A DNA stretch of 13,793 nt from Ramazzottius varieornatus. Taxonomy: Eukaryota; Animalia; Tardigrada. Of the stretch, positions 1 through 13,793 are shown in pieces (positions within the stretch are counted from its first letter, which is position 1; each line of letters starts with the position of its first letter). A program made the position numbers and the translations under genes. The notes below the pieces were generated by a model. That model ran no database searches and was not told the DNA's origin. It worked only from the letters and a program-made list of their open reading frames with translations. Location: contig BDGG01000034.1 in the NCBI GenBank assembly GCA_001949185.1, positions 1 to 13,793 of the forward strand, written 5' to 3'.

Positions 1-12
1 GTGTTTGCGAAG

Positions 13-3000
13 GCGGGAGATTGGAAGAAGAGCGAGGCTACGTGCAGGAGATTCACGGTTCAGAAGTGGGCGCGACACCGTTGGTCATCCTACAGACACC
101 GACGGCCAACGCATCGTCCGTCCTGACGGCGGAAGCTCTGTTGCTCCATCTGAAGATTGCCCTTCTAGCCACGGAAGTGGAAGTTGAAATCTTCAAGAAC
201 ACATGGACACTGCGCGACATCTGCCACAAAGCGGCCTTTCCTACCTTCGACGAACGCATCAGCGGAACTTTCAGCGACGTAAGCTAAGACGGCATCTTCT
301 CATGGAAAGAATGCTCTGATTGCATAACGCAATGCTTTCCTCTAGGCACTGGAACATTTGTATCCCTGCAGTATAATATCGCCGCTGGACTGCTTCTGGG
401 AAGGCGCCAAACTACTCGGACCGCCCAATGCCGTTCTGATACCGTAAGACCGAATCGTTCTTCTTTCCAGACTGCTCCACAAACGGCAAAAAGTGAACAA
501 TGCGGGTGAAAGCCGCCATTTTGCTTTGACGGTGTACTTTCGACTGGGTGGAACGAAAAGGTCGTAATTTACATTACAATGTGGAATAGGGCGTCGACAA
601 GAAGTGGCCACAATGGATGGTCTGTGGGAAGCGAAGAGTGGTCAAAGACAGACCAACAGGGAAGGTTGTTACACATTTGCATAATGGCCACTTCTTTCCT
701 TTACTTTTGTGCTGGTCACTGTGGCCAGTGGCCACCTGTTGCTTATTGTTGAAATATTGCAACCGTGGTTGTTCTAATGGCTTCTCATTAGCCCAGCTCG
801 CCCATTGATGCTCGGCCATTACACAAGCGCTGACAATTTCAAGGATTGCTAATATGGACCAATTACTAGAAGACGGTGGCGCTTTCTAGAAAAAACGTCT
901 GGGTTGTGTGGATACCCAACAGAAGGCAGTACAAGACCTTTCCGATGAGGAGATTTCATAATTTCATCTCGAGTAGTAAGAAATGAAGATGGCCTGATCC
1001 GGAGAACACTACACCCGCGTAACTCGGCAGTCCTAAAAGCCCGCTTAGAATGATTTGCTAACTAAGGTCAGTTTCTCCTTTAATCGTACTGATCAAGCAA
1101 TCAAAGTTGCCACCACAGTTTTTATACTGTTAGCAAGATCTGAAGTTGATCTATCCAGCGAGCGGGACGACGACTGCAACGAGTCAGAAACAAATATAGC
1201 ACAGAATTTCAAAGTCCATCCAACTCCAAACTGTGTAGCTACAAGACTATTCCTCTCGTACATTACAACCAACGGTAGGGATTTGTGCATCCGAGTACTT
1301 GACGTTAGTTATAATTTGACAGGGGTTATACCGAGCGAGTGACGTGGGCCAGTCTCCATCCCCAAAAGTTGGTTGCCACCTTGAAGCAGATGCAAAATGT
1401 CAGCTTTGCCGACAGTGCGGAAGGCGCACTGGAAGAGGCCTACTTCGACGCTCAACCCTTTATTACCTTCCTCCACAAGGTGAGACTGGTCAATTGTAGG
1501 CTTTGCGAGAGCTGCCTTACAAAAAGCTCTGTTGTTCTTCGCAGGCCGGGATTGACAGTGGCTACATGGAGAAGCCATGTCTCGAGCCCGACAACGTTGA
1601 GTGTCCCGACACAGCGCCCAACAAACTGACAAAACAGCTGCCCGATGTCGCTGAAGTCTTATCGGGTGGGTGTGTCGGTATCAGCAGGAAGTTTATGCGC
1701 TGGAATGAGGAACTGCTGCTGGGACAAGTCCAGCGGAATAAGGCGCACAAACTTACAGTGTAGGTCTTTTTACGGTGAAAGAAACTGCTACTTCCCTCCA
1801 GGCTTACTTCCCCTCCGCATTGCGAGGTGGACATTGCTATACGGAAGGAAATTTCGTCTTTTTTGTTCTACAGTGCCTCCGCCATGCAGACCATCTTTCA
1901 CATCAGCGGTGCAAGAACGTTGTATGGCCACTGGAAGGACGAACTGAAGACCCACGAGATCGACTGGAGCGAAGAAGCTGCCGCTGAAGTCATCGGCGCA
2001 TGGCAAGCCAAGTATTCTGCGCAGGTTGAGATCCTCTTGAACCCATCGGGCAATGGTACGGCCGACAGTCCAGTAATGGTTTACTACGAGGAAAGTCTTC
2101 ATCGGATACTGAACGACTTGTCCCAGTTCGGCCTTGTCCGTATCGCCATGGGATATTCGCTTGTGGTACCGCACTCTTTGTCTCTCTTCCCCCTTTTCGT
2201 TTGAGTATCATACGCACGTGCTGTCATTCGTAGGTGCTTTACTTGCTGTTTTCCATCAAGCGCTGGTCGGAGGCGGTGAGCTCCTTCGCAGGCGTGGCGG
2301 TTGCCGGTCTGCTGCTGGCCAGTCTGGCCGTGGCAGCTGGCCTCAGTCTTTGTATCCTCTGCAAGATCCCTCTCAACGCCTTGAGCTCGCAGATCGTTCC
2401 CTTCTTGGCACTGAGCTTGTCGCTTCATCACATTGTCAGAATGGTCAAGACCTTGGCCACTCTCTCTACAAAGGAACTCCAAAACGAGGTAAGCTTACCC
2501 TCACTTTTCAGCCAAAGCCGAAAAACAAATCTCTCTTTTTGATGATAGAATTACTGTGCCGAGTCACTGAAGAGGAATGGACTGTACATTGTGCTTTCGA
2601 CCGTCTGTGCCAGCGCGTCCTTCTTCGTGGCCTTCATGGTACCCATACCCGCCCTCCGCTCCTTCTCCTTACAGGTAAAGGGCTGAAGAAAGGTTAAAGT
2701 TTCCCTTCCGAGAGGCCTTTCGTTGTAGCAGCTGACCACAAGAAGATTTTCTAGATGGGAATTTTGGCCGCTCTGACATTGCCCATTATGCTGTTGCTGC
2801 TTCCTGCCGTCATCGAGCTCGATCAACGGCGCCGTTGCGCTGGTCGTTTCGACATCTTGTGCTGCTTTGGTCGGGCCAAAGATAATATCACTCAAGTGAA
2901 ATATTCCAGCCCAAGCAAGATGACGACAGTCAACGGTCCCTTTAGCCGACGCAGCCACACTCGTTCTTCCGGCCGAAGCGTGACTTGTCCTAAGCGCGGT

Positions 3001-5279
3001 CGCCGTGGCTGCAACTCATGTCCTCTTGGGACGGTGAGCGTCTCCGCTCTCGGACCACTGGACAAGCGACTGCTGCAGTCGGGCATGCTTCCACGCGGCA
3101 TCAGCCACAACTTGTCGGCCTCCACCGATTCCATCTTGCGGGTCGACCCTCCGTCCTGCTGTTCTGACCTGGAAAGCTCTTGCCAGAGAATCAGTCTGTC
3201 CGAATGGCTGACCAAGCAATACCTCTGCGCCATCACCTCTTCATTCCTCAAGCTGGTGGTGGCTTTGAGCTTTCTTCTCTTGATGGGCTCTTCGGCCTGG
3301 GGTATTGCGCGGATTGAAGAAGGGCTGAGCTTGAAAGAGTTTGTGCCCAAGGACACAAGAGAGCAGCGCTACTTGCATGTCAGTGAAAAGAGCTTTGGCT
3401 GGTACAGCTTCCAGGCAGTGACCAAAGGCGGCTTCGAGTACCCATACCACCAACAGCTGCTCCATGACTATCACCGAGCCTTCCAAAGTGTGGCAAATAT
3501 CGTGCGGGATGGAAATGGGAATCTTCCTCCTTACTGGCTTGCTCGGATGCGTGACTGGCTCATGGGTATATTTGTCATCTAGCCTTTATTTTCCATCTAA
3601 CAGGGACGAACTGCAAGGCAACAGTACTGTACCGTCTTGTTGCAGAACTCGATGCGACGCTGAGAAAAGAGCTGCCTAACCATCGCAATTTCAACATTCA
3701 GACGTGGACCGTCAACGCATCGGACGATGCCATCCTGGCCTTCAAACTGCGAGCTTTGCAAACCGGAAAGGATGATCACGATATCGAGGAGGTAATTTCA
3801 CCGCCAGCACCACATATAGTGTGCTGTGGCCCTTTATGTTGTCGGCTAGGCTGATTGCAAGACCTTTGTGATTGCAGGTTGGGGCTGTTCGCTTGGTGGA
3901 CAGCAAAGGCATCATCAACCCCAAGTCCTTCTATTTCTACCTGAGTGCCTGGGTGGGCAACGACCAGCTGGCTTATGACGCCTGCCAAGCCATGCTTCAC
4001 CCCGAACCCAAAAGGTGGACTTTCGACCGGCCCAAAGACCTCAACTTTGTCCTGCCGCGCTCCCTCCCTCTGGACTATGCCCAGTTCCCCTTTGATCTCC
4101 ACCAGCTGCGGGACAGCGCCGACATCATTGGTGTCGTCAAAGAGATTCGCGCCATCTCCGACCAATTCAGCACCGTCAGGAAGCTGCCCAACTTCCCCAG
4201 CGGAAGCATCTTCCTCTACTGGGAACAGTACTTTAAGCTGACCTTCAACCTTCTGACGGCCCTCTCTACCCTTCTCGTCAGCTTCTTCTTTGTCATATGG
4301 ATTGTATCAGCCAGTTTGTGGTCGGCTATGGTCATGGTAGGCGCCCTTTGTCCGCTATTCGCTTCTATCCCCTTTAAAGACCTTCTTCCTTGTTTACAGA
4401 CATTGATGATGGCTGTGTCTGTCATGCAGATGGCAGGACTGATCGGCTGGCTGGGTATCAAGATGAACGCCATCTTGGCCGTTATCCTCATCTTCTCGAC
4501 GGGCTTGGCCAACCTCTTTTCCATGCAGATGGGACTGTCCTTTGTCACCTTTGTCGGAAGTCGTAATCGGAGGACTCAGTGTGCTCTCTTTGGTGGTGTG
4601 TGGCCCATCCTTCATGGCAGCGTTGCATGTCTGCTTGGCCTCTCCATGCTGGCTTTTACCCGCTTTGACTTTGTCTTCCAGTAAGTCATATGCCCTGTGC
4701 CTCATCGATGGACATGTCTGTAATTGGCCTCCTACTTTCTAGGTACTGTTTCCTGATTCTGACGGGCATCATTTCACTGTCAGTCCTCAACAGCCTCGTC
4801 TTCTTGCCGGTCTTACTATCCCTTGTTGGGCCTTTGCCTGATGTAAGAATGAGTTTCCTGCGCCTGGACTCTTTCGGTATGACTTTTTCATCTGTCAACT
4901 GTCTATCGGTATATTGCAGTTCATTGCCAATGACGATGCTGACGAGGTGCCGGTTCTGACACCCGAGCCAGCAGCGTACATGTCGCAGCGAAGCGCCGCC
5001 TACCGCGTCTCCCTGTCGACCATCAGTGAGGAAGACGCCATCTCCTGCCAACAAGTCTTCCTCGAGCCTCACATCATCCTGGAGACGACAACGACCACTC
5101 AGCCTAGCTCCAACAATCTATCACCCAGCGGCACCATAGCCAACAGTGAGGGCTCCTCCTTCAACGGCAATAGCACATCGACCAAGACGGTCGTCTCAGC
5201 CCGCGCACAACTCATGGTCGAAGTACATCGGCCTGCAACTTCAAGGAACTCAAACTTCCAAAATCAAACAGTTGGCTGA
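13..5279 (+). CDS. ptc: Patched (Hedgehog receptor, RND/sterol-sensing-domain 12-TM protein), 5' end outside the window; 13 exons, ~1187 aa visible
   Basis: Exons ~13-278, 346-443, 1323-1479, 1545-1759, 1874-2165, 2234-2488, 2549-2674, 2755-3565, 3646-3791, 3878-4336, 4400-4680, 4743-4842, 4920-5279. All internal junctions are GT-AG and phases join into one frame. Patched motifs: [144 protein letters not shown], and arthropod-like tail motifs SLSTISEE and [11 protein letters not shown]. The acceptor of the first visible exon (AG at 11-12) is uncertain. Confidence 0.96.
4746..5263 (+). repeat. Left arm of a long inverted repeat (partner 13276-13793)
   Basis: Base-by-base comparison with the reverse complement of 13276-13793 shows no mismatch over 518 bp. 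The outer limit is set only by the window end, so the true arm is probably longer. Confidence 0.97.
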
Positions 5280-8062
5280 TGTAGATTACAGGTCGGTCTG
5301 AGGAAATTTCCTGGTAAAACGAAACTTGTTTGCCCTGTTGCTTAAGGTGGTCGTGTAATTGGTAGATATAACACATCCACTGAGTATGCCCTTAAGGTTC
5401 GGATATTTTTATTCGGTCTGCAAAAACCATTGTCAGAACCCGCACCTTATCCCGCTGGCTGGGTCGGTTCTTTTCGATATAAACTCATCACGACCATCCC
5501 TGTAGATATCTCGCAGTCCGAACAGTTCAACCACTTGTCCTCTACTTCTTTACCAAGCGACAAAAGCCGCATGGAGGCTCAAGATGGTTAGTTGTTCCCG
5601 GCTTTTGATCGAGACGGTGGAGGGATAAAATTATACGGAATCTTTGAGTAAACATCGGAAGGTCAGAAAGTGCCGCATGATTGACGGTTGGTCATTCTTG
5701 TCAGATTGCGGGTGGCCATAAATCATATCGGCTTTCCGCTTCGAATCTATGGATCAGATTGCTACCTGTATTCTACCCAGTGGAACTTATATGGCTTTCT
5801 CCTCACACGCACTCCCTCACCTCATTAAAAGCCGGCTAACAAGCATTCCAAATATTTTCTTAAAGCATCTCATAGCACGCTCAATTGACACGTTCACACA
5901 ACTACACGCGTAAAACGATTGACCACAGGACGAAAAGCCTATTCTTCCAACACGCGTGTTTTCATTGCTTCCACCCAGGCGCCATCGCTGACATTTGGGT
6001 TTGCACACAGGCTCTGGATTTTGTGCTTTCTTTCTACACCAATAATTCTTCGGCAGGTACCCGTACCACTTTCCGAGTGGATCAGACCAGCAGTCGCCGA
6101 ATGTAACGAAACAAAAAGCTCGGGCTTGAAACAAGGAACGCTAGATCTCGTTGGTCTTAATCACAGGTTCAGAGGACAAGGATGAGAAGCGAGGTAACAT
6201 GACACGCACAGTACAAATTTCCCGCTGTGATGAACTCGTTCTATCATAAACAATCGTCTTCTGAATCTTCTTTTGGACTTGCAATGCCGCCCCAGAGGCA
6301 AGGAAGTATCCACTGATGAAAGGCACTTTACCTGTTTTCTCTATGGATTGACAAGAGCTCGGCTGGATTTCATCCTTGCGAAACCTTACGGATGACACAT
6401 GAATAGACAGAGGATCGGAGGCTGTGGTCAGGTGTGGCTGGAGGACGGTATTGGAGTGATTAGAATACTATTAATACAACAGGCAAGTGTGTCAAAGGCT
6501 CTCACAGCTTGGGGAACGTGTTAATGGGCAGATCTCACAGAGACGCTCTGCTGTGAGTTTACCGATTGTGTTTGACTTGGACTACTCTGCGCAATTAGCC
6601 CAGGGAAGAAGATAAGCAAGGCCGTGTTTGCTCTATCGCCAATCTTTTTATACGCTGGCCACAAAAGAATTATCACTGCCAATTTCCCCCTGTAGGGTCG
6701 TTCCCGTATGACAAGCGGGACCATGGTCCTCTTCCGCCCGCGCAGTCGCACACCTTGAAGGCAGAATGATGGCCAATTCAACCCAGGAATTTTCATCTTG
6801 TAAGTTGGCTTATTAAATCCATCACGGGAACAATCGAAGCGCCAGCATCTGCTGCATGCTGTCTTCTGTCCATCTCTTTACACAAGGGATGATGTCCCGC
6901 TTGGTCTCCTGTCTGTCTTTTCACAAAATGAAACTGGCTTTTAATGAAAGTGTGTTTCTGTACAGGACCATCTGCAAGAGTGAAATTTCCTGTTGTGCCA
7001 CATTATGTCAGATGAGATAGCAGACGTCGTTCGTCGACGGTGTCCTATACATCAGTCCTCGCCGAGGATATTGCGGCATGTGCCACACTTTCCAATCGAC
7101 CCACCGGTAACATATCATCAAGCAAGTTTAATCAAACTTTAAGTGCGCCCTAAAGACAGAGACTTCTGTCAAAACTTTCAACTTTAGCACAGCAGGACAA
7201 CACAAATTACCCACTTGTCGGTAGTATTTAACAATCATTTTAAAGCTGGGTGGCGGACACGCGTGGTCAAACTCAAGACGGCGCGGACATCCTCCCTATA
7301 GTTTCCTACGATCGCGTACCAGGAAGTGGACAGTAAAAACTTTTCCGATGTGAAAATTCTCTAAAAAGATGTCGCCTTGGACAATCACAGCGTCTCTAAT
7401 CCCGTCCTGTTTTTTCTTCTTGTTTGAGACTATCCGATTCTTGAGGCTAAAAGAAGACAATACTATCTGTTTTCACGGTTGGGTAGTTCTGATTGGGTAT
7501 GGCCAATTTTCGGTGGTCAACGCCTTCGGGAAAGTCCTCATCCTACTCGGTTACGCGTTAGATGTTCGAGTAGGATCAGCGCATATGCCGCCCACACACC
7601 ATGCGGCGGACAATGGCTCGCTGCAGTAGGACCAGCTCGTAGGAGTAGGCCTGTTTGGCCAAGGGGCGGGCTTTGGACCGCTTGCCCTGTTCCGCCTTTG
7701 TGTGTGGGCCAGTTGGTGCAGCAGCGATACGGATCATTCAGTTCTCTTGATGGCGATATCCCATGCAGATTAGTCGCGTTAAATCTTTCCACTTCATTAC
7801 GCATCTTCGCCTTTCGAATAATTTCGGCATTGTTCTGGATCTGCCTTCTCAATTAGGGTAACCCTCCATTAAATCTATTACCCGTTTGATATCCTGGACG
7901 GTGTGCCGAACTGAGCCAGTCAACGCATATCATGCAAGGTGGAATTCCAGGAATTTGTTGGGGAATTTACCGATAAGGAGGAAAGACCACTTGTTGTTGT
8001 TCCATCGTTTTCTTCTTCTACGTACCCTCAACATGTGGCCGCAGATCCTGGCCATCCAGAGA

Positions 8063-8128
8063 ATGAATATCTTCCATGTTCTGCTCTTGTTTGTCTCGAT
8101 GATGCGCTTTGTAACCAGCTGTGACAGC
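8063..8128 (+). other. Predicted Hedgehog signal peptide (MNIFHVLLLFVSMMRFVTSCDS)
   Basis: 22-residue hydrophobic stretch directly before CGPGR (Cys codon 8129-8131), the established mature, palmitoylated N-terminus of Hedgehog proteins. Confidence 0.8.
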
Positions 8129-11100
8129 TGCGGACCCGGAAGAACAGGACACCGTCGCCCGCCAAAGAAGTTCCGCGACGACAGGCCGCTACGCGTCAAA
8201 GAGTTTATACCCGCTGCTTCGGAATTCTCCTACAAGGCTAGTGGACCTCCAGAAGGCAAGATCGTCAGGAACGATGCTCGATGGCGGAAACATTTGGTCC
8301 GCGTCAAGAGTCCCAACATCAAGTTCTGGGATGAGGAACGAACAGGCACGGATCGTTACATGACCAGAGTAAGTTGGCAACCGACCTTTTCCCCATTTCT
8401 CTCTCGCTAATCAAGTCCTTTTTTTTCGTTGTATACATGCCTGTGGTGCCATGTAGAATACGGTGCAGACCGCCGACCTTTCGAAATCCTGTAACATGAG
8501 TGACATCTTTTGGTCTCTCACACCCCGCAAGTTGCTCGCATCGAAAACTTGGCAGCAAATTGGCAAAACTGGGGCTTTGTTAGACTTCTTGTTCGTCCGC
8601 TTTGCGGGCTCGAGGTGATGGTATTGCAAGGGTGATACGGGGAGCTGTAAGGCAGATCCAGATTGCTCTTTGGGTGGTAGATTTGGAAGCGTTTGGTCAG
8701 CTTGGAAAAGCTTTAGGCCTGTGCTCGAGCTCAGGGCAAAATCAGGAGGCGATCTGGCCATGTGTGTCTTACCTTCCCCATAGCCAAAACCAACCTGGTT
8801 TCCTAATCTTGTGTACACAGAACGTTTGCAAATAAGGCCTCTTATTGGGATTTGTGCTCATGATGGTGGGGTAGAGGCTCGTTGTGGGGCATCTGTTTTC
8901 GTAAGGAAGAAAGGAGCGTTATACTTTTGGACAGGCTGTACAATAGCGCGGGATTATCTCGTATTCAGCGACAAAACAAACATGCCAAAATGCCATCGCG
9001 CCTCCTGCATTATGCCCCTTTCTTTACCTTTAGCCTGAAACTTTCCCTACTTCCTCCGCTATCCATCACCCGCAAGTAGTGTCGGGAGGTGGGAACAGGA
9101 TGACTTCTGTTTTTCCGACGATCGAGTTGTGTCCAGGGGTGCGCCAAGAACCCGGACGTCTTGGTTTCGAACATGCTTTACACAGTTGAGCTAGACTACC
9201 AAGAGCTGCAGCTCATAAGATATATTCGACGTATTGCACTTCGAGTGCGAGTCATTGCAACCGTTTAGAAATCAAAACTTTCAAAATCAATGACGCCCTC
9301 AATCATCCTCTTCAGCTCTACACAGTTTGCAGTAACCGACGCCCGAGTAGGAGTACTGAACACTTGAGACTTGGAGCACTGCAAGATGCCGTTGAGATTT
9401 CAGCGTTGTCTCCCCGCGCCTCTTGTTGAAAGTGATACGATTACCTGACAAAACTGTGAAAGTTTGCCGCCCGCAATCAAATACCGTCTCCGTCGAAAAG
9501 GCTCTTTCAAACATGTGGACAGCAATCAAGATGGTCTCCATTCATTCCTGTCACGACCGCCAAGACTTTCTCACCATATTGAACTAGCCTTTTATTGCGC
9601 CACTTCCTCGTTGCATCAATCCTTGTAAAGGGGAAGGTCATCATTGTAGCGGAATGTCTCGGGCATAATCGGAGAGTAGATGGGTAACTAGGTGAAGATT
9701 GTTCTCAATGTCGACGGCCGTTTCTTACCTGCTCTGCTTTCTCTTCAACATGGCGAGCGTGAGACGAGCATGTAGCTTCCTTCTTAAACATGTTTTCTTT
9801 AGGCTGAAATCAGATCCATCAGCAAACACGTCAGTTAACGATTTCCCTTTGATATCTGCAAAGAGCGAAGGAAGACATTGTAATCAGCTCATAAATGCCT
9901 TTGCCAATTAACACGTTTCTCCCTGTCGTCTTGACCAACGTGTTGGACGCTGCATCGGCGGCTCAGGTCACCGCTTGGCTATCGGTTTCCCAGACGGAGC
10001 AACGTCGTAAAAAGATATAACTAATGGAATGCGCTTTGTGTACTTGCAGAGATGTCGGGAGAGCCTGGAGCGGTTGGCGGTGATGGTGCGCAATGAATGG
10101 GCTGGCGACTTTCTCTTGGTGACGGAAGCCTATGACGACAACTACGTCCACACCAAGGGCTCGCTCCATTACGAAGGACGCGCACTAGACCTCAAGACGC
10201 GTGCACGCAACCGAACGCGCTACGGACAGTTGGCCAGGATGGCCGTTAAAGCCGGCTTCGACTGGGTTTTCTACGAAAACAGAGCTCACATCCATGTGTC
10301 TTGTCGATCAGGTAACAAAGACAAATAGGCTAAAAACAAGCAGTTCCTCGCTTCTTTCATTTCTGACTTGATTTCTGATAGTCTTCGTTTGTGTTAGCTT
10401 ACCCTGCCGCTTTATTCTGCGTGCTTCTACTATTGATACATATATAGCTCATGATCTGATCTTTTTTTTTCCTTTACAGATAATTACGAGTGGCAAAAGC
10501 TCCTGGGAGACGAAAAATGCTTCCACGCGGACAAGAGCAGCGTCTTTCGCCAGCTTCGTTCTCATCCTCACATGTTTGAGAGTACCCCCATGAAGAAGCT
10601 ATCCGTTGGCGACCAGGTCCTGGCCAGGCAGGCAGACGGCATCGTCGTGCCCTCCGAAGTGATCGCATGGATCCACGTCGACAACTCTTCCCAGGCCCTC
10701 TTCCTCAGCATCCAGACCGAAGACGGCAAGAAGCTGACCCTGACGCCCTCCCATCTCCTCCACCTCCAGACCGAACAAGGAAGTATCGTTAGCCGTTTTG
10801 CCCGTGACATTTCCATCGGTGACAAACTCCTGACCATGGCATCAGCTTGGACCGCAGGACAAAGAGTAACGAACGATGGAGTGTCCATGATAACCAAAGC
10901 CGACAAGGTGATTGGCATTGAAGAGGAGATATCGGTGGGTAGTTTGGCTCCGTTGACACGCCACGGGACCATCCTGGTCAATGCGGTGTCGGCTTCGTGT
11001 TACGCTGCCATTGACAACACAGAGATGGCGCATGCGGCGTTCGCCCCACTGCGATGGTGGACTTTGTTGGTCGGTGTGGACAAGAAAGGCTCCAGTGATT

Positions 11101-11204
11101 CTCACGGTATTCATCTTTACGCCAAAACCTTACTCGGTATCTCTAGTTTCTTCTCGTCAGTGGGTAACGCTGTGACCAGTACCTTGGGCTTGTTGAAACA
11201 GTGA
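8063..11204 (+). CDS. hh: Hedgehog precursor (signal peptide + Hedge signalling domain + Hog/Hint autoprocessing domain + sterol-recognition region), 3 exons, ~430 aa
   Basis: Exons 8063-8368, 10050-10311, 10480-11204 (alternative in-frame ATG at 8033). Introns fall at the conserved hh positions (MTR|RC phase 0; after HIHxSxxS phase 1). Motifs: CGPGR, basic RRPPKK, FIP..E....ASG..EGKI.RN, DEERTGTDRYMT, VTEAYD, SLHYEGRALD, YGQLARMAVKAGFDWVFYE..HIH, then CF, LSVGDQVL, LTLTPSHL, APLTRHGTILVN..ASCYA, AHAAFAPLR, GIHLYAK. Confidence 0.97.
10518..11204 (+). other. Hog domain (intein-like Hint + sterol-recognition region) of Hedgehog
   Basis: Begins at the catalytic Cys (TGC 10518-10520, CF); retains the TxxH block-B motif (TPSH), SCYA and the SRR motifs AHAAFAPLR and GIHLYA. 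Confidence 0.92.
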
Positions 11205-11584
11205 CGTGTGTCGCATTATTGTAGCTACTCACATTTGCCATTTGAATAACCAGCGCTTCTTAAGTTTTTAGTTTCTGACAGATTTTAATTGTGCTTTCTT
11301 TCGTAATCGCAACTTGCAGAATTACTTGTTTTTCCTCGTACTATTTACAGCGTTTCCAATTCGGTCTTCTAAAAAAGTGCGTCGTCATACTGTACGTTTG
11401 ATTTAGAAACAGATTTCCGCGTCGAAACAAAATTAGCCGTTTGATAATCAAGGATAAACGATAACGGGTAAACACAACTCATAATCAATTTTAGAAAAAC
11501 AGAAAAAATGTCGTAGTAGTGCGCGCACAGCTATAACTTGTAAACAGAATGTGACCAGGGTTGTCATTGCTGGAGAACCTCGGT

Positions 11585-12694
11585 TCATAACCACAAACGA
11601 GTTTCCGGATGTCCGTGAGGGTCGAGTGAGTAACAAAAGAGAGTGGAAACCAGTGGATGAACCGCCCCGATAAACCCTTTCAAATCGCCCATCCGGATGA
11701 GATCTAATGCCTTATGAGCACCAGTGTTCGGATCGATCCTAAAACAAGAATGGTTGACTGAATTTCAATCAGCATGAATTCCAGCGTTCAACACGATTTC
11801 TACCTTTTTATCAGCTGACCAACAAAATACAGACAAGCCTCGGAGACATTGTCATCGACAAGCCAAGTGAGCTTCGCAGACACAGTCCTAAAACGCCTTC
11901 CATCCATTTCCAAAGGCACTGCGTGGCGTAGTGCGAAGTACATTGACGTGGGATGTGGAAGAATCTGTCCGCAAGAGCTCCGGGTAGAAATTCGGTCAGT
12001 GAAGGAGGTTTTGTGCGAATCGCGACCCATAACTTTGACTGTCAGTGGAGTGTTCATAGCTGAGAGGAGCAGGTAGACGGAAGCCAAGCCGTTCTTCGAG
12101 TTGATATCCTCGACGTCTGGCGTGAAAACACTCATGATCTCGTGCGCCGACATTTTTAGAGTTACGTTGATCAGAACAGTTTCGAAGCCAATTCGACGGG
12201 TATACGGACACTGGAACACCTCTGATTGAATGGTCATGTTGGCGTAGACTACCTTCCCCACCCTGCGGGATCGTTCATCGATTTTCACCTGAGCCTCGTA
12301 CGACTTCCAGACGTTCTCGATCATCCATTCACGGGACTCCCAGATGGTTTTGTCGCTTGTGGGGTTCTCAAACATCAGCATGGTGGTGGCCACTCCAGCC
12401 AACTGCCAGAAGTTGCTCTGCGGCTCCATATCGGCCAAGTCACAGTGTATGAACGCCTCCATGGGGATGACGACTTTCCGCATGAACGGTGCGCATTCTC
12501 TGGAGATCGCACTTAGCCATTTTGTACAGACTCTGCAAGGACAGCAAGCCTAAGCTCCACAACTCACCAGTACCTCCAAGACAGCTTTCGTAGTAAAGAG
12601 GGACTTACCGACGAATACGCAGCAGCTGAAAGAAGTCGACGCACTGGAAAAGTTGGTCCAGAACTCCAGGCGGAATATCGTCGAAGACAACCAT
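11585..12694 (-). CDS. F-box domain protein with an unrecognised C-terminal domain, 3 exons, ~322 aa
   Basis: Exons 12694-12609, 12532-11804, 11738-11585 (introns 76 nt GTAAGT..TTGCAG and 65 nt GTAGAA..TTTTAG; 969 nt in frame). Splicing gives N-terminal MVVFDDIPPGVLDQLFQCVDFFQLLRIRRVCTKWLSAI, matching the F-box pattern (F.DLP.E+L..IF..LD...LL.+R.VCK.W), joined to ORF 11800-12483. The third exon is less certain; without it the CDS stops at 11800. Confidence 0.78.
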
Positions 12695-13271
12695 GACAGA
12701 CTCTGGCAGTTATTGACAGGCCACCAGAGATCCGCGAGTAGCTGCAACCGAGTACGCTGAGGGGGGTGAAACCGAGTACAGTACACTGTGAGCTGTATTA
12801 ATGATCAACAGCAAAAACAAAATAGATCCGTTTCGACCTCGTAAGTCAAACGTGAGCCGGATCTTGACAGGAGCCCGAACTTTAGCAGCTGCGCCCTATT
12901 TGTCTTTTTGTTCTCAGCGGGTTGCCAATACACAGTTTTCGGCCCTGTCAGCAGGATTCGACTGTCGTCGGTCAACAGCAAAGACGGATGTTTCGCACAT
13001 GGGTTTTGAACTTTTATTATACGGAAATTCGACTCAACAAAGACCATGAAGAATGTCTGCGGTTGAATACATACTGAAAAAAAGCTGCTCCAGAATTTGC
13101 ATCATGAACAATGGGATATTTATGATGGAATTCGGTGTTTTCAGTTCCCGACACCGTACATATTGTGCAGTAGCTCGCACAGGAAAGAACAACGGGACGA
13201 ACGCTACGCAAACGCATCCAAATTAACAAAACCACTTCGCAACAGGTACGTAACTCACGTTAGACAACTGT

Positions 13272-13793
13272 TTAGTTTTGGAAGTTTGAGTTCCTTGAAG
13301 TTGCAGGCCGATGTACTTCGACCATGAGTTGTGCGCGGGCTGAGACGACCGTCTTGGTCGATGTGCTATTGCCGTTGAAGGAGGAGCCCTCACTGTTGGC
13401 TATGGTGCCGCTGGGTGATAGATTGTTGGAGCTAGGCTGAGTGGTCGTTGTCGTCTCCAGGATGATGTGAGGCTCGAGGAAGACTTGTTGGCAGGAGATG
13501 GCGTCTTCCTCACTGATGGTCGACAGGGAGACGCGGTAGGCGGCGCTTCGCTGCGACATGTACGCTGCTGGCTCGGGTGTCAGAACCGGCACCTCGTCAG
13601 CATCGTCATTGGCAATGAACTGCAATATACCGATAGACAGTTGACAGATGAAAAAGTCATACCGAAAGAGTCCAGGCGCAGGAAACTCATTCTTACATCA
13701 GGCAAAGGCCCAACAAGGGATAGTAAGACCGGCAAGAAGACGAGGCTGTTGAGGACTGACAGTGAAATGATGCCCGTCAGAATCAGGAAACAG
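13272..13793 (-). CDS. ptc: Second Patched copy, 3' end only (part of penultimate exon 13793-13697, intron 13696-13620, last exon 13619-13272)
   Basis: Reverse complement of 4746-5263 with splice sites intact. Ends ...RNSNFQN* (TAA 13274-13272), four residues shorter than copy 1 (...FQNQTVG*). Whether the copy is full length cannot be seen in this window. Confidence 0.8.
13276..13793 (-). repeat. Right arm of the inverted repeat (partner 4746-5263), runs off the window end
   Basis: Identical to the reverse complement of 4746-5263 over 518 bp; spacer between the arms is 5264-13275 (8012 bp). Confidence 0.97.

What the first reader, a model, noticed from the sequence alone, without database searches (positions are those of the whole stretch)
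13..13793. Hedgehog ligand gene enclosed between two inverted copies of its receptor patched: a ptc > hh > < F-box < ptc cluster
Seen: ptc ends at 5279, hh starts ~2.8 kb downstream on the same strand, and a second ptc 3' end points back toward it from 13793-13272. Established: in Drosophila and vertebrates hh and ptc are unlinked and usually expressed in different, neighbouring cells. Inference: this may be a physically clustered, co-inherited ligand-receptor module, possibly co-regulated or autocrine. Matching catalytic-motif changes in both partners (separate findings) suggest a non-canonical Hh-Ptc system. I know of no description of this arrangement but cannot search the literature.
Basis: partly seen in the sequence, partly recalled or inferred. 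Interest (0 to 1): 0.9.

Follow-up and report, generated by a model that had tools for sequence, protein, structure and literature searches.

The report
Hedgehog gene inside a patched palindrome
In the tardigrade Ramazzottius varieornatus the only hedgehog gene lies between two almost identical, inward-pointing copies of its receptor gene patched; the layout is real and apparently undescribed, but it looks like one of this genome's many inverted duplications and nothing yet shows that it has a function.

Summary
The window is a whole 13,793-bp scaffold of Ramazzottius varieornatus. It holds most of a true patched orthologue (12-5279, +), the genome's single hedgehog gene (RvY_19332; 8033-11204, +), an F-box-like gene (12694-11800, -) and an inverted copy of the patched 3' end (13793-13250).

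The second patched copy is not an artefact of those 544 bases:
- The arm is 100% identical for 518 bp, then about 73% for 26 bp, then unrelated.
- Two different 5' flanks, each with the patched 5' exon, feed the window's left end: the start of scaffold C12, and the end of C27 via C166.
- These flanks resemble each other over only about 5.5 kb, as a mosaic of 100%, 71-77% and unalignable blocks, and carry copy-specific SNPs.

Best model: a palindrome with arms of about 10 kb and an 8-kb spacer holding hh. Gene conversion homogenises it, and the assembly collapsed its inner 5.2 kb.

hh-ptc linkage seems older than the duplication. In Hypsibius exemplaris both genes lie on one 397-kb scaffold, and an unnamed hypsibioid contig of 51 kb appears to hold both. 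In Paramacrobiotus they are on different scaffolds.

Co-regulation or autocrine signalling has no evidence. The scan's notes list other inverted duplications in this genome, on other DNA.

The parts
12..5279 (+). patched copy A, exon 3 to the stop codon. Approximate exons: 12-260, 346-444, 1324-1533, 1551-1760, 1779-2174, 2198-2677 (with a short intron), 2755-3561, 3639-3779, 3875-4681 (with an in-frame intron-like insert), 4741-4842, 4920-5279. Exons 1 and 2 lie on scaffold C12, at about 3610-3404 and 2732-2538, minus strand.
   Evidence: PTCH1-only matches among solved structures. Sterol-sensing domain at 2276-2674. tblastn with H. exemplaris and P. metropolitanus Patched. Genome-wide, ptc-like sequence occurs only at this locus.
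1..694 (.). Left-end overlap. It dovetails with C12:695-1 (one difference in 695 bp). From position 6 it is also matched by C166:495-1157 and C27:71600-71914, which carry the other copy's variants at positions 14, 17 and 37.
38..5263 (.). Inferred homogenised tract of about 5.2 kb, shared by both ptc copies and present only once in the assembly (collapsed).
   Evidence: Copy-specific SNPs stop at position 37. Perfect identity of the arms ends at 5263. No other contig holds the ptc body. The collapse itself is an inference.
4746..5289 (+). Arm A of the inverted repeat as visible within the window (the last two ptc exons, the stop codon and 10 nt beyond it).
5264..5289 (.). Inner edge of the duplication: 26 nt at about 73% identity between the arms, including an exact 9-mer, after 518 identical nt. 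This is older, unconverted homology. It gives the two copies different C-termini (four extra residues and a later stop in A).
5290..13249 (.). Unique 7,960-bp spacer of the palindrome.
   Evidence: No Pfam or Rfam hit in its non-hh, non-F-box parts.
8033..11204 (+). hedgehog, single copy, RvY_19332 / GAV09860.1, 440 aa. Exons 8033-8368, about 10047-10316 and about 10476-11204.
11800..12694 (-). F-box-like gene, convergent with hh (595 bp between the stop codons) and 578 bp downstream of the ptc copy B stop, on the same strand. Putative exon 1 is 12694 to about 12608; exon 2 is about 12549-11800.
   Evidence: Motif read by eye across an intron. Profiles, Atlas and a structure model were uninformative.
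13250..13793 (-). Arm B: 3' end of patched copy B (exons 13789-13694 and about 13628-13272, stop at 13272-13274), cut off by the scaffold end.

Best explanation
The window is the centre of a palindromic segmental duplication in Ramazzottius varieornatus.

**Layout.** Two convergent copies of patched, each with about 0.9 kb of upstream sequence and some outer flank, form arms of about 9-10 kb. They surround a 7.96-kb spacer that holds the only hedgehog gene and an F-box-like gene:

C12(reverse) - ptc> - hh> <F-box-like - <ptc - C27(reverse)

Which outer flank sits on which side cannot be told, because the inner arms are identical. The spacer may even flip between the two orientations.

**History.** The duplication is old: the unconverted blocks are only 71-77% identical. 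Arm-to-arm gene conversion keeps the promoter-proximal block, exon 2 and the whole 5.2-kb stretch from exon 3 to the stop codon identical. That is why the Sanger assembly collapsed the inner arms. It left only read-length overhangs, 544 bp at the right end and 660-690 bp at the left.

**Linkage.** hh-ptc linkage was inherited from a hypsibioid ancestor, in which the genes lay within tens of kb. It became immediate adjacency in this lineage.

**Shown and inferred.**
- Shown: gene identities, adjacency of ptc and hh, the inverted arm, two distinct 5' flanks, and the mosaic identity.
- Inferred: that the second copy is complete, that conversion is the homogenising process, and the order of events.
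- Most likely consequence: two doses of a concertedly evolving receptor gene. There is no demonstrated regulatory coupling with hh.
For: - **Species and scaffold.** Hh protein RvY_19332 lies on a 13,793-bp contig, and the window is the whole of contig C34.
- **Arm B.** It is 100% identical over 518 bp, then has 26 nt of diverged homology, then unrelated sequence. A chimeric junction would switch abruptly.
- **Two 5' flanks.** The left end is entered by C12:1-695 and by C27 end plus C166. Each carries the ptc exon for residues 67-131.
- **The flanks are paralogous, not allelic.**
  - C12 and C27 are alike only across C12:5562-375 and C27:67841-71914, as a mosaic of 100%, 99%, 71-77% and unalignable blocks. 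Nothing is similar beyond that.
  - Gene content outside the arms is unrelated: a Cdc27-like gene on one side, P450 and cadherin-like genes on the other.
  - A dispersed 303-bp repeat sits only in the C12 copy.
- **Copy-specific variants.** The variants at positions 14, 17 and 37 are shared by two independent contigs.
- **No other ptc sequence in the genome**.
- **Assembly method.** Sanger reads from 3.5-kb clones and fosmid ends were assembled with PCAP.REP (PMC5034306). This fits read-length overhangs into a collapsed repeat.
- **Palindromes are known in this assembly.** Four are counted, covering 22 genes (PMC7953838).
- **Linkage elsewhere.** H. exemplaris Hh and Ptc both sit on a 396,958-bp scaffold, with accessions 19 apart. 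One Hint fragment and two Ptc fragments, each closest to H. exemplaris, all sit on an ENA contig of 51,463 bp.
Against: - Only 544 bp of the second 3' end and about 0.66 kb of the second copy's inner 5' part are actually assembled. The middle exons (residues 307-1165) exist once, so copy B could be partial.
- The C27 copy has a 50-N gap where exon 1 should be.
- In P. metropolitanus the genes are on different scaffolds.
Confidence: 0.7

Rival explanations
1. There is one complete patched gene next to hh. The second 3' end (arm B) and the C27/C166 5' part are leftover fragments of a partial or decayed duplicate (pseudogene pieces), not a second working gene.
For: The middle ptc exons are present only once in the assembly. 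No contig shows copy B beyond about 0.66 kb on one side and 0.54 kb on the other. Exon 1 of the C27 copy lies in an assembly gap.
Against: - Every visible piece of copy B keeps an open frame. It shows one amino-acid change, two synonymous changes and an in-frame shift of the splice acceptor.
- The C-terminal exons are identical.
- The promoter-proximal 722 bp is 100% identical.
- No deletion-junction contig exists.
- A collapsed identical repeat explains the single assembled copy, given the Sanger assembly.
Confidence: 0.12
2. It is an assembly artefact. Arm B would be a chimeric clone or misjoin at the scaffold end, and C12 and C27 would be alternative haplotypes or misassembled ends, so no inverted second copy exists.
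For: The repeat sits exactly at a scaffold end, and both ends of this small scaffold lie in repeats. No read-level check was possible. PMC7953838 warns that palindromes in assemblies can be scaffolding errors.
Against: - The junction shows graded homology (an exact 9-mer after two mismatches), not an abrupt switch.
- The spacer is 8 kb, so this is not a fold-back.
- Two 5' flanks and two 3' flanks match a two-copy model exactly.
- C12 and C27 share no similarity beyond about 5.5 kb and have different genes, with 71-77% blocks too diverged for alleles.
- The SNPs of the C27 version are reproduced in C166.
Confidence: 0.06
3. It is a functional ligand-receptor supergene. Selection would keep hh, ptc and perhaps the two linked smoothened paralogues together, so that co-adapted non-canonical partners are inherited or regulated as a unit. 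The palindrome would protect the receptor by conversion.
For: - Linkage appears retained in three hypsibioid lineages.
- The motif changes are hypsibioid in Hh and shared by all three tardigrades examined in Ptc.
- Two Smoothened-like genes lie 300-330 kb away on the scaffold that joins the window.
- The homogenised tracts include the promoter-proximal block.
Against: - There are no expression, polymorphism or functional data.
- Ptc motif loss also occurs in Paramacrobiotus, where hh and ptc are on different scaffolds.
- Inverted duplications with conversion signatures are common in this genome, so enclosure of hh may be incidental.
- In H. exemplaris the genes seem to be about 19 genes apart, not adjacent (inference from accession order).
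- A scan for Gli-type sites was not informative.
- In canonical systems hh and ptc are expressed in complementary cells (general knowledge).
Confidence: 0.12

Closest known systems
Gene-bearing palindromes (inverted segmental duplications) homogenised by arm-to-arm gene conversion, such as those on primate Y chromosomes and those counted in parthenogenetic animals, including four in R. varieornatus (PMC7953838)
   Same: Inverted arms around a unique spacer. The inner arms are near-perfectly identical, and older divergence remains at the edges and in patches. The arms carry a gene.
   Different: - The arms are small (about 10 kb).
- The arms carry a receptor gene while the spacer carries that receptor's ligand gene.
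- The second arm is not assembled, so an annotation-based palindrome screen working on the published assembly could not have detected it.
Canonical Hedgehog-Patched pair of Drosophila and vertebrates
   Same: Orthologous ligand (HH_signal plus Hint, with the CGPGR N-terminus) and orthologous 12-TM receptor with a sterol-sensing domain.
   Different: - In flies and vertebrates the genes are unlinked (general knowledge). Here they are 2.75 kb apart.
- Ptc lacks the TM4 acidic pair and the TM10 glutamate.
- Hh has K before the CF cleavage site instead of G.
Linked ligand-receptor loci such as the plant S-locus (SRK/SCR) or basidiomycete pheromone/receptor loci
   Same: The genes for a secreted ligand and its receptor are physically adjacent.
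   Different: Those loci are polymorphic recognition systems, where linkage preserves matching alleles. Nothing here shows haplotype polymorphism or a recognition role. The comparison comes from general knowledge and was not tested.

Membership tests
Patched (PTCH1/Ptc orthologue) | Best and exclusive similarity to Patched rather than NPC1, Dispatched or PTCHD | tested here: met
   Solved-structure hits are PTCH1 only, apart from one marginal NPC1L1 hit. H. exemplaris Patched hits only this locus in the genome. The nearest named proteins are Patched.
Patched (PTCH1/Ptc orthologue) | Sterol-sensing domain in TM2-6 | tested here: met
   PF12349 at 2276-2674, 44.7 bits, above the cut-off. The short Pfam Patched model PF02460 does not hit, and is likewise not recorded for the other two tardigrade Patched proteins in the precomputed Pfam domains.
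Patched (PTCH1/Ptc orthologue) | RND-type acidic residues: TM4 GxxxDD and TM10 GxxxE | tested here: not met
   TM4 reads SLSLHH and TM10 reads GLANLF. H. exemplaris and P. metropolitanus also lack them. Orthology stands, but the transport mechanism may differ.
Hedgehog | HH_signal domain followed by a Hint module in one gene | tested here: met
   PF01085 and PF01079. The 440-aa protein RvY_19332 maps to three exons.
Hedgehog | G-C-F autoprocessing junction | tested here: not met
   The junction is K-C-F in R. varieornatus and a close relative, R-C-F in H. exemplaris, and G-C-F in P. metropolitanus and the outgroups.
Palindromic segmental duplication with gene conversion | Two reverse-complementary homologous arms on one molecule around a spacer | tested here: inconclusive
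   Arm A and 544 bp of arm B lie on one scaffold. The rest of arm B is inferred from the second 5' flank on C27/C166. No reads were available.
Palindromic segmental duplication with gene conversion | Identity profile with two ages: perfect tracts beside old diverged homology | tested here: met
   There are 0 differences in 518 bp, then about 7 in 26. The outer arms are a mosaic of 100%, 99%, 71-77% and unalignable blocks.
F-box protein | F-box domain recognised by a profile | tested here: inconclusive
   No Pfam hit for any piece. The Atlas search and the structure model (pLDDT 33) were uninformative.
Ligand-receptor supergene | Linkage conserved across species beyond what neutral synteny gives, or co-segregating matched haplotypes | not testable with these tools
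There are no coordinates, population data or genome-wide synteny baseline.

The most novel reading that the evidence does not exclude
In hypsibioid tardigrades the core Hedgehog pathway genes form a selectively maintained linkage block of about 340 kb: hh, two patched copies kept identical by a palindrome, and two smoothened paralogues. In it a non-canonical ligand (no glycine at the cleavage site) and a non-canonical receptor (no transporter acidic residues) would co-evolve and be inherited together.
Probability: 0.1. Interest if true: 0.8.

Novelty: new variant of a known kind. Interest (0 to 1): 0.45.

Why it matters
hh and ptc are textbook unlinked genes. Here the receptor gene is duplicated as a palindrome around the ligand gene, and some linkage seems to persist across hypsibioid tardigrades.

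- **If the linkage is only structural,** this is a clean small model of palindrome formation and patchy gene conversion in a compact animal genome. It also warns that the reference assembly hides a second patched gene and splits the first across two scaffolds, which affects gene counts for the Hh pathway in tardigrades.
- **If the linkage is selected,** it would be a rare animal case of a developmental ligand-receptor gene block. It could be tested by embryonic expression and by comparing tardigrade genomes.

Tried and rejected
The H. exemplaris scaffold and the 51-kb ENA contig could therefore not be read.
- **JGI metagenome scan for tardigrade hh** gave only a 1.4-kb contig.
- **Supplements of PMC5034306** (per-scaffold coverage, expression) are not held.
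- **Literature.** Searches found nothing on hh-ptc linkage in tardigrades or on the locus tags.
- **Pfam Patched model PF02460** does not hit the window. This reflects a short model and divergence, not absence of ptc.
- **F-box.** Pfam on the separate exons, the Atlas and a single-sequence AlphaFold model (pLDDT 33) all failed. No fold search was run on that model.
- **Spacer.** No Rfam family was found in the window, and no Pfam domain in the spacer's other open frames.
- **Gli/Ci-type sites.** Counts were 7 against about 3 expected in the window and 8 against about 1.5 expected in the first 8 kb of C12, nearly all with one mismatch. The only perfect site lies at the outer edge of the C12 arm. 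This is not informative.
- **Haplotig idea for C12 and C27.** Rejected, because similarity stops after about 5.5 kb and the flanking genes differ.
- **Fold-back artefact.** Rejected because of the 8-kb spacer.
- **Complex prediction** was not used. Hh-Ptc binding is assumed from orthology only.
Full report
**What the window is**

The window is the whole of contig C34 (13,793 bp) of a 55.84-Mb, 200-contig genome. The annotated Hedgehog protein RvY_19332 (GAV09860.1) of Ramazzottius varieornatus sits on a contig of exactly this length and maps to the window at 100% identity. The species is therefore settled.

**The genes**

- **hedgehog.**
  - HH_signal lies at 8129-8368 and 10032-10301, and Hint at 10455-11201.
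  - The protein maps to three exons, 8033-8368, about 10047-10316 and about 10476-11201, followed by the stop codon.
  - It is the only HH_signal locus in the genome.
- **patched.**
  - Pfam's short Patched model misses the upstream gene.
  - Its large open frames nevertheless hit only PTCH1 among solved structures (E 3e-28 and 3e-46).
  - Its sterol-sensing domain scores above the cut-off.
  - H. exemplaris Patched aligns to it exon by exon, from window position 12 to 5255.
  - Exons 1 and 2 lie outside the window on scaffold C12, at about 3610-3404 and 2732-2538 on the minus strand. The first 694 bases of the window overlap the start of C12 in dovetail fashion.
- **ptc-hh gap.** The ptc stop (5277-5279) and the hh start (8033) are 2,753 bp apart on one strand. 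Nothing recognisable lies between them.
- **F-box-like gene.**
  - On the minus strand, an open frame at 11803-12549 follows a short exon. An F-box-like motif, split by an intron, can be read across the two by eye.
  - No profile, Atlas search or structure model confirms it.

**The second patched copy**

- **The right end.**
  - The window ends in an inverted copy of 4746-5289.
  - The arms are identical for 518 bp. They then differ at about 7 of 26 positions, yet still share an exact 9-mer. After that they are unrelated.
  - A chimeric join would not leave graded homology.
  - As a result the two copies have different C-termini.
- **The left end.** Two different sequences enter the window here.
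  - One is the start of the 1.74-Mb scaffold C12.
  - The other is the end of the 71.9-kb scaffold C27, bridged by the 1.16-kb contig C166.
  - Both carry the ptc exon for residues 67-131.
- **C12 and C27 are paralogous arms, not haplotypes.**
  - They resemble each other only between C12:5562-375 and C27:67841-71914.
  - Within that stretch they form a mosaic. A 722-bp block just upstream of exon 1 is 100% identical. A 705-bp block with exon 2 is 99-100% identical. Other blocks are 71-77% identical or unalignable.
  - A dispersed 303-bp repeat is present only in the C12 copy.
  - Beyond the arms the two scaffolds share nothing and hold different genes.
- **Copy-specific variants.** The C27/C166 version differs from the C12/C34 version at window positions 14, 17 and 37 and at the splice acceptor. 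From position 38 onward it is identical.
- **No other ptc.** No other contig holds any ptc sequence.

**The model**

One body of sequence with two 5' flanks and two 3' flanks is what a collapsed two-copy repeat looks like. The genome was assembled from Sanger reads of 3.5-kb clones and fosmid ends with PCAP.REP (PMC5034306). Overhangs of 540-690 bp into a repeat are about one read long.

The simplest layout is therefore C12(reverse) - ptc> - hh> <F-box-like - <ptc - C27(reverse):
- Arms of about 9-10 kb.
- A 7,960-bp spacer.
- An inner 5.2 kb (38-5263) that is identical in both arms.

Which outer flank lies on the hh side cannot be decided across an identical 5.2-kb tract.

The two ages of sequence point to an old duplication that gene conversion keeps homogenising.

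Palindromes are already known in this assembly: four are counted, covering 22 genes (PMC7953838). The scan's notes list further inverted duplications with similar profiles elsewhere in this genome (unchecked). This one is thus an instance of a genome-wide habit.

**Is the hh-ptc linkage older than the palindrome?**

- **H. exemplaris.** 'Protein hedgehog' (OQV17015.1) and 'Protein patched' (OQV16996.1) are each recorded on a contig of 396,958 bp. They are therefore on the same scaffold. By accession order they are about 19 genes apart, which is an inference.
- **An unnamed hypsibioid.** Three gene-call fragments each sit on an ENA contig of 51,463 bp.
  - One Hint fragment is 58% identical to H. 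exemplaris Hh.
  - Two Ptc fragments are 61% and 75% identical to H. exemplaris Ptc.
  - That they share one contig is inferred from the identical length.
- **Paramacrobiotus metropolitanus.** Hh lies on a 3.85-Mb scaffold and Ptc on a 1.27-Mb scaffold.

Linkage therefore looks like a hypsibioid trait that became immediate adjacency in Ramazzottius.

**What could not be tested**

- Co-regulation, autocrine signalling and selection for co-inheritance remain untested.
- The paper's supplementary tables are not held.
- A scan for Gli-type sites was not informative.
- The literature searches found no description of this arrangement.

**Context on the pathway**

- All three tardigrade Patched proteins lack the TM4 acidic pair and the TM10 glutamate.
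- Hypsibioid Hh has K or R instead of G before the CF cleavage site, whereas Paramacrobiotus keeps G.
- Two Smoothened-like genes lie at about 303-307 kb and 326-331 kb of C12. This agrees with scan note s1-795035.
- No SUFU domain was found in the genome, which is a weak negative.

**Verdict**

The functional part is open.
- It is a new variant of a known kind: a gene palindrome whose arms hold the receptor gene and whose spacer holds the ligand gene.
- Interest is moderate.

Noticed in passing
G000 scaffold C12, about 303-307 kb (minus strand) and about 326.1-331.4 kb (plus strand); loci L031, L032: Two divergent Smoothened-like genes about 20 kb apart, on the scaffold whose start joins this window. 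This puts hh, ptc and smo within about 340 kb. For one exon the best solved-structure hits are Smoothened (E 3e-11) ahead of Frizzled-4 (1.7e-8).
   Followed up: partly
whole genome G000: No match to the SUFU Pfam domain PF05076 anywhere in the genome. This is a weak negative, because the six-frame search works exon by exon.
   Followed up: no
window 2414-2431 and about 4490-4510; proteins P0291, P0017: The Patched TM4 acidic pair and TM10 glutamate are missing in R. varieornatus, and also in H. exemplaris (GLNVFY / GIGLKF) and P. metropolitanus (VTHLQH / GVAWRI). The loss is shared by all three tardigrades compared.
   Followed up: partly
window about 10476-10500; proteins P0172, P0171, P0173, P0175: The Hh autoprocessing junction reads K-CFH or R-CFH in the hypsibioid species but G-CFH in Paramacrobiotus. 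The Paramacrobiotus HhN also has an insertion of about 44 residues.
   Followed up: partly
G000 C12:1877-2179: A dispersed repeat of about 303 bp, with dozens of copies at 89-95% identity on many scaffolds, is inserted in intron 2 of one ptc copy only.
   Followed up: no
window 1065-1223: A short repeat of about 140-160 bp in a ptc intron matches C8:1976075-1976216 (85%), C3:1167619-1167755 (78%) and C29:37473-37628 (70%).
   Followed up: no
window about 4350-4400, inside open frame 3872-4681: About 18 codons have no counterpart in any Patched sequence (query residues about 160-177). This is probably a short in-frame intron without a stop codon.
   Followed up: no
window 1-12 against C166:486-498: The two ptc copies differ at the exon 3 splice acceptor. 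The C27/C166 copy has a CAG acceptor. The C12/C34 copy lacks it and would have to use an AG 3 nt downstream, dropping one residue in frame.
   Followed up: partly
G000 C27:69540-69589: A 50-N assembly gap sits where the C12 copy has about 0.6 kb containing the putative ptc exon 1. The start of the second copy is therefore unassembled.
   Followed up: partly
proteins P0209 and P0397 (Owenia fusiformis): In the annelid Owenia fusiformis, Hedgehog and a Patched protein are both recorded on a 62,201,769-bp chromosome. In the several insect species that could be compared, the two genes are on sequences of different lengths.
   Followed up: no
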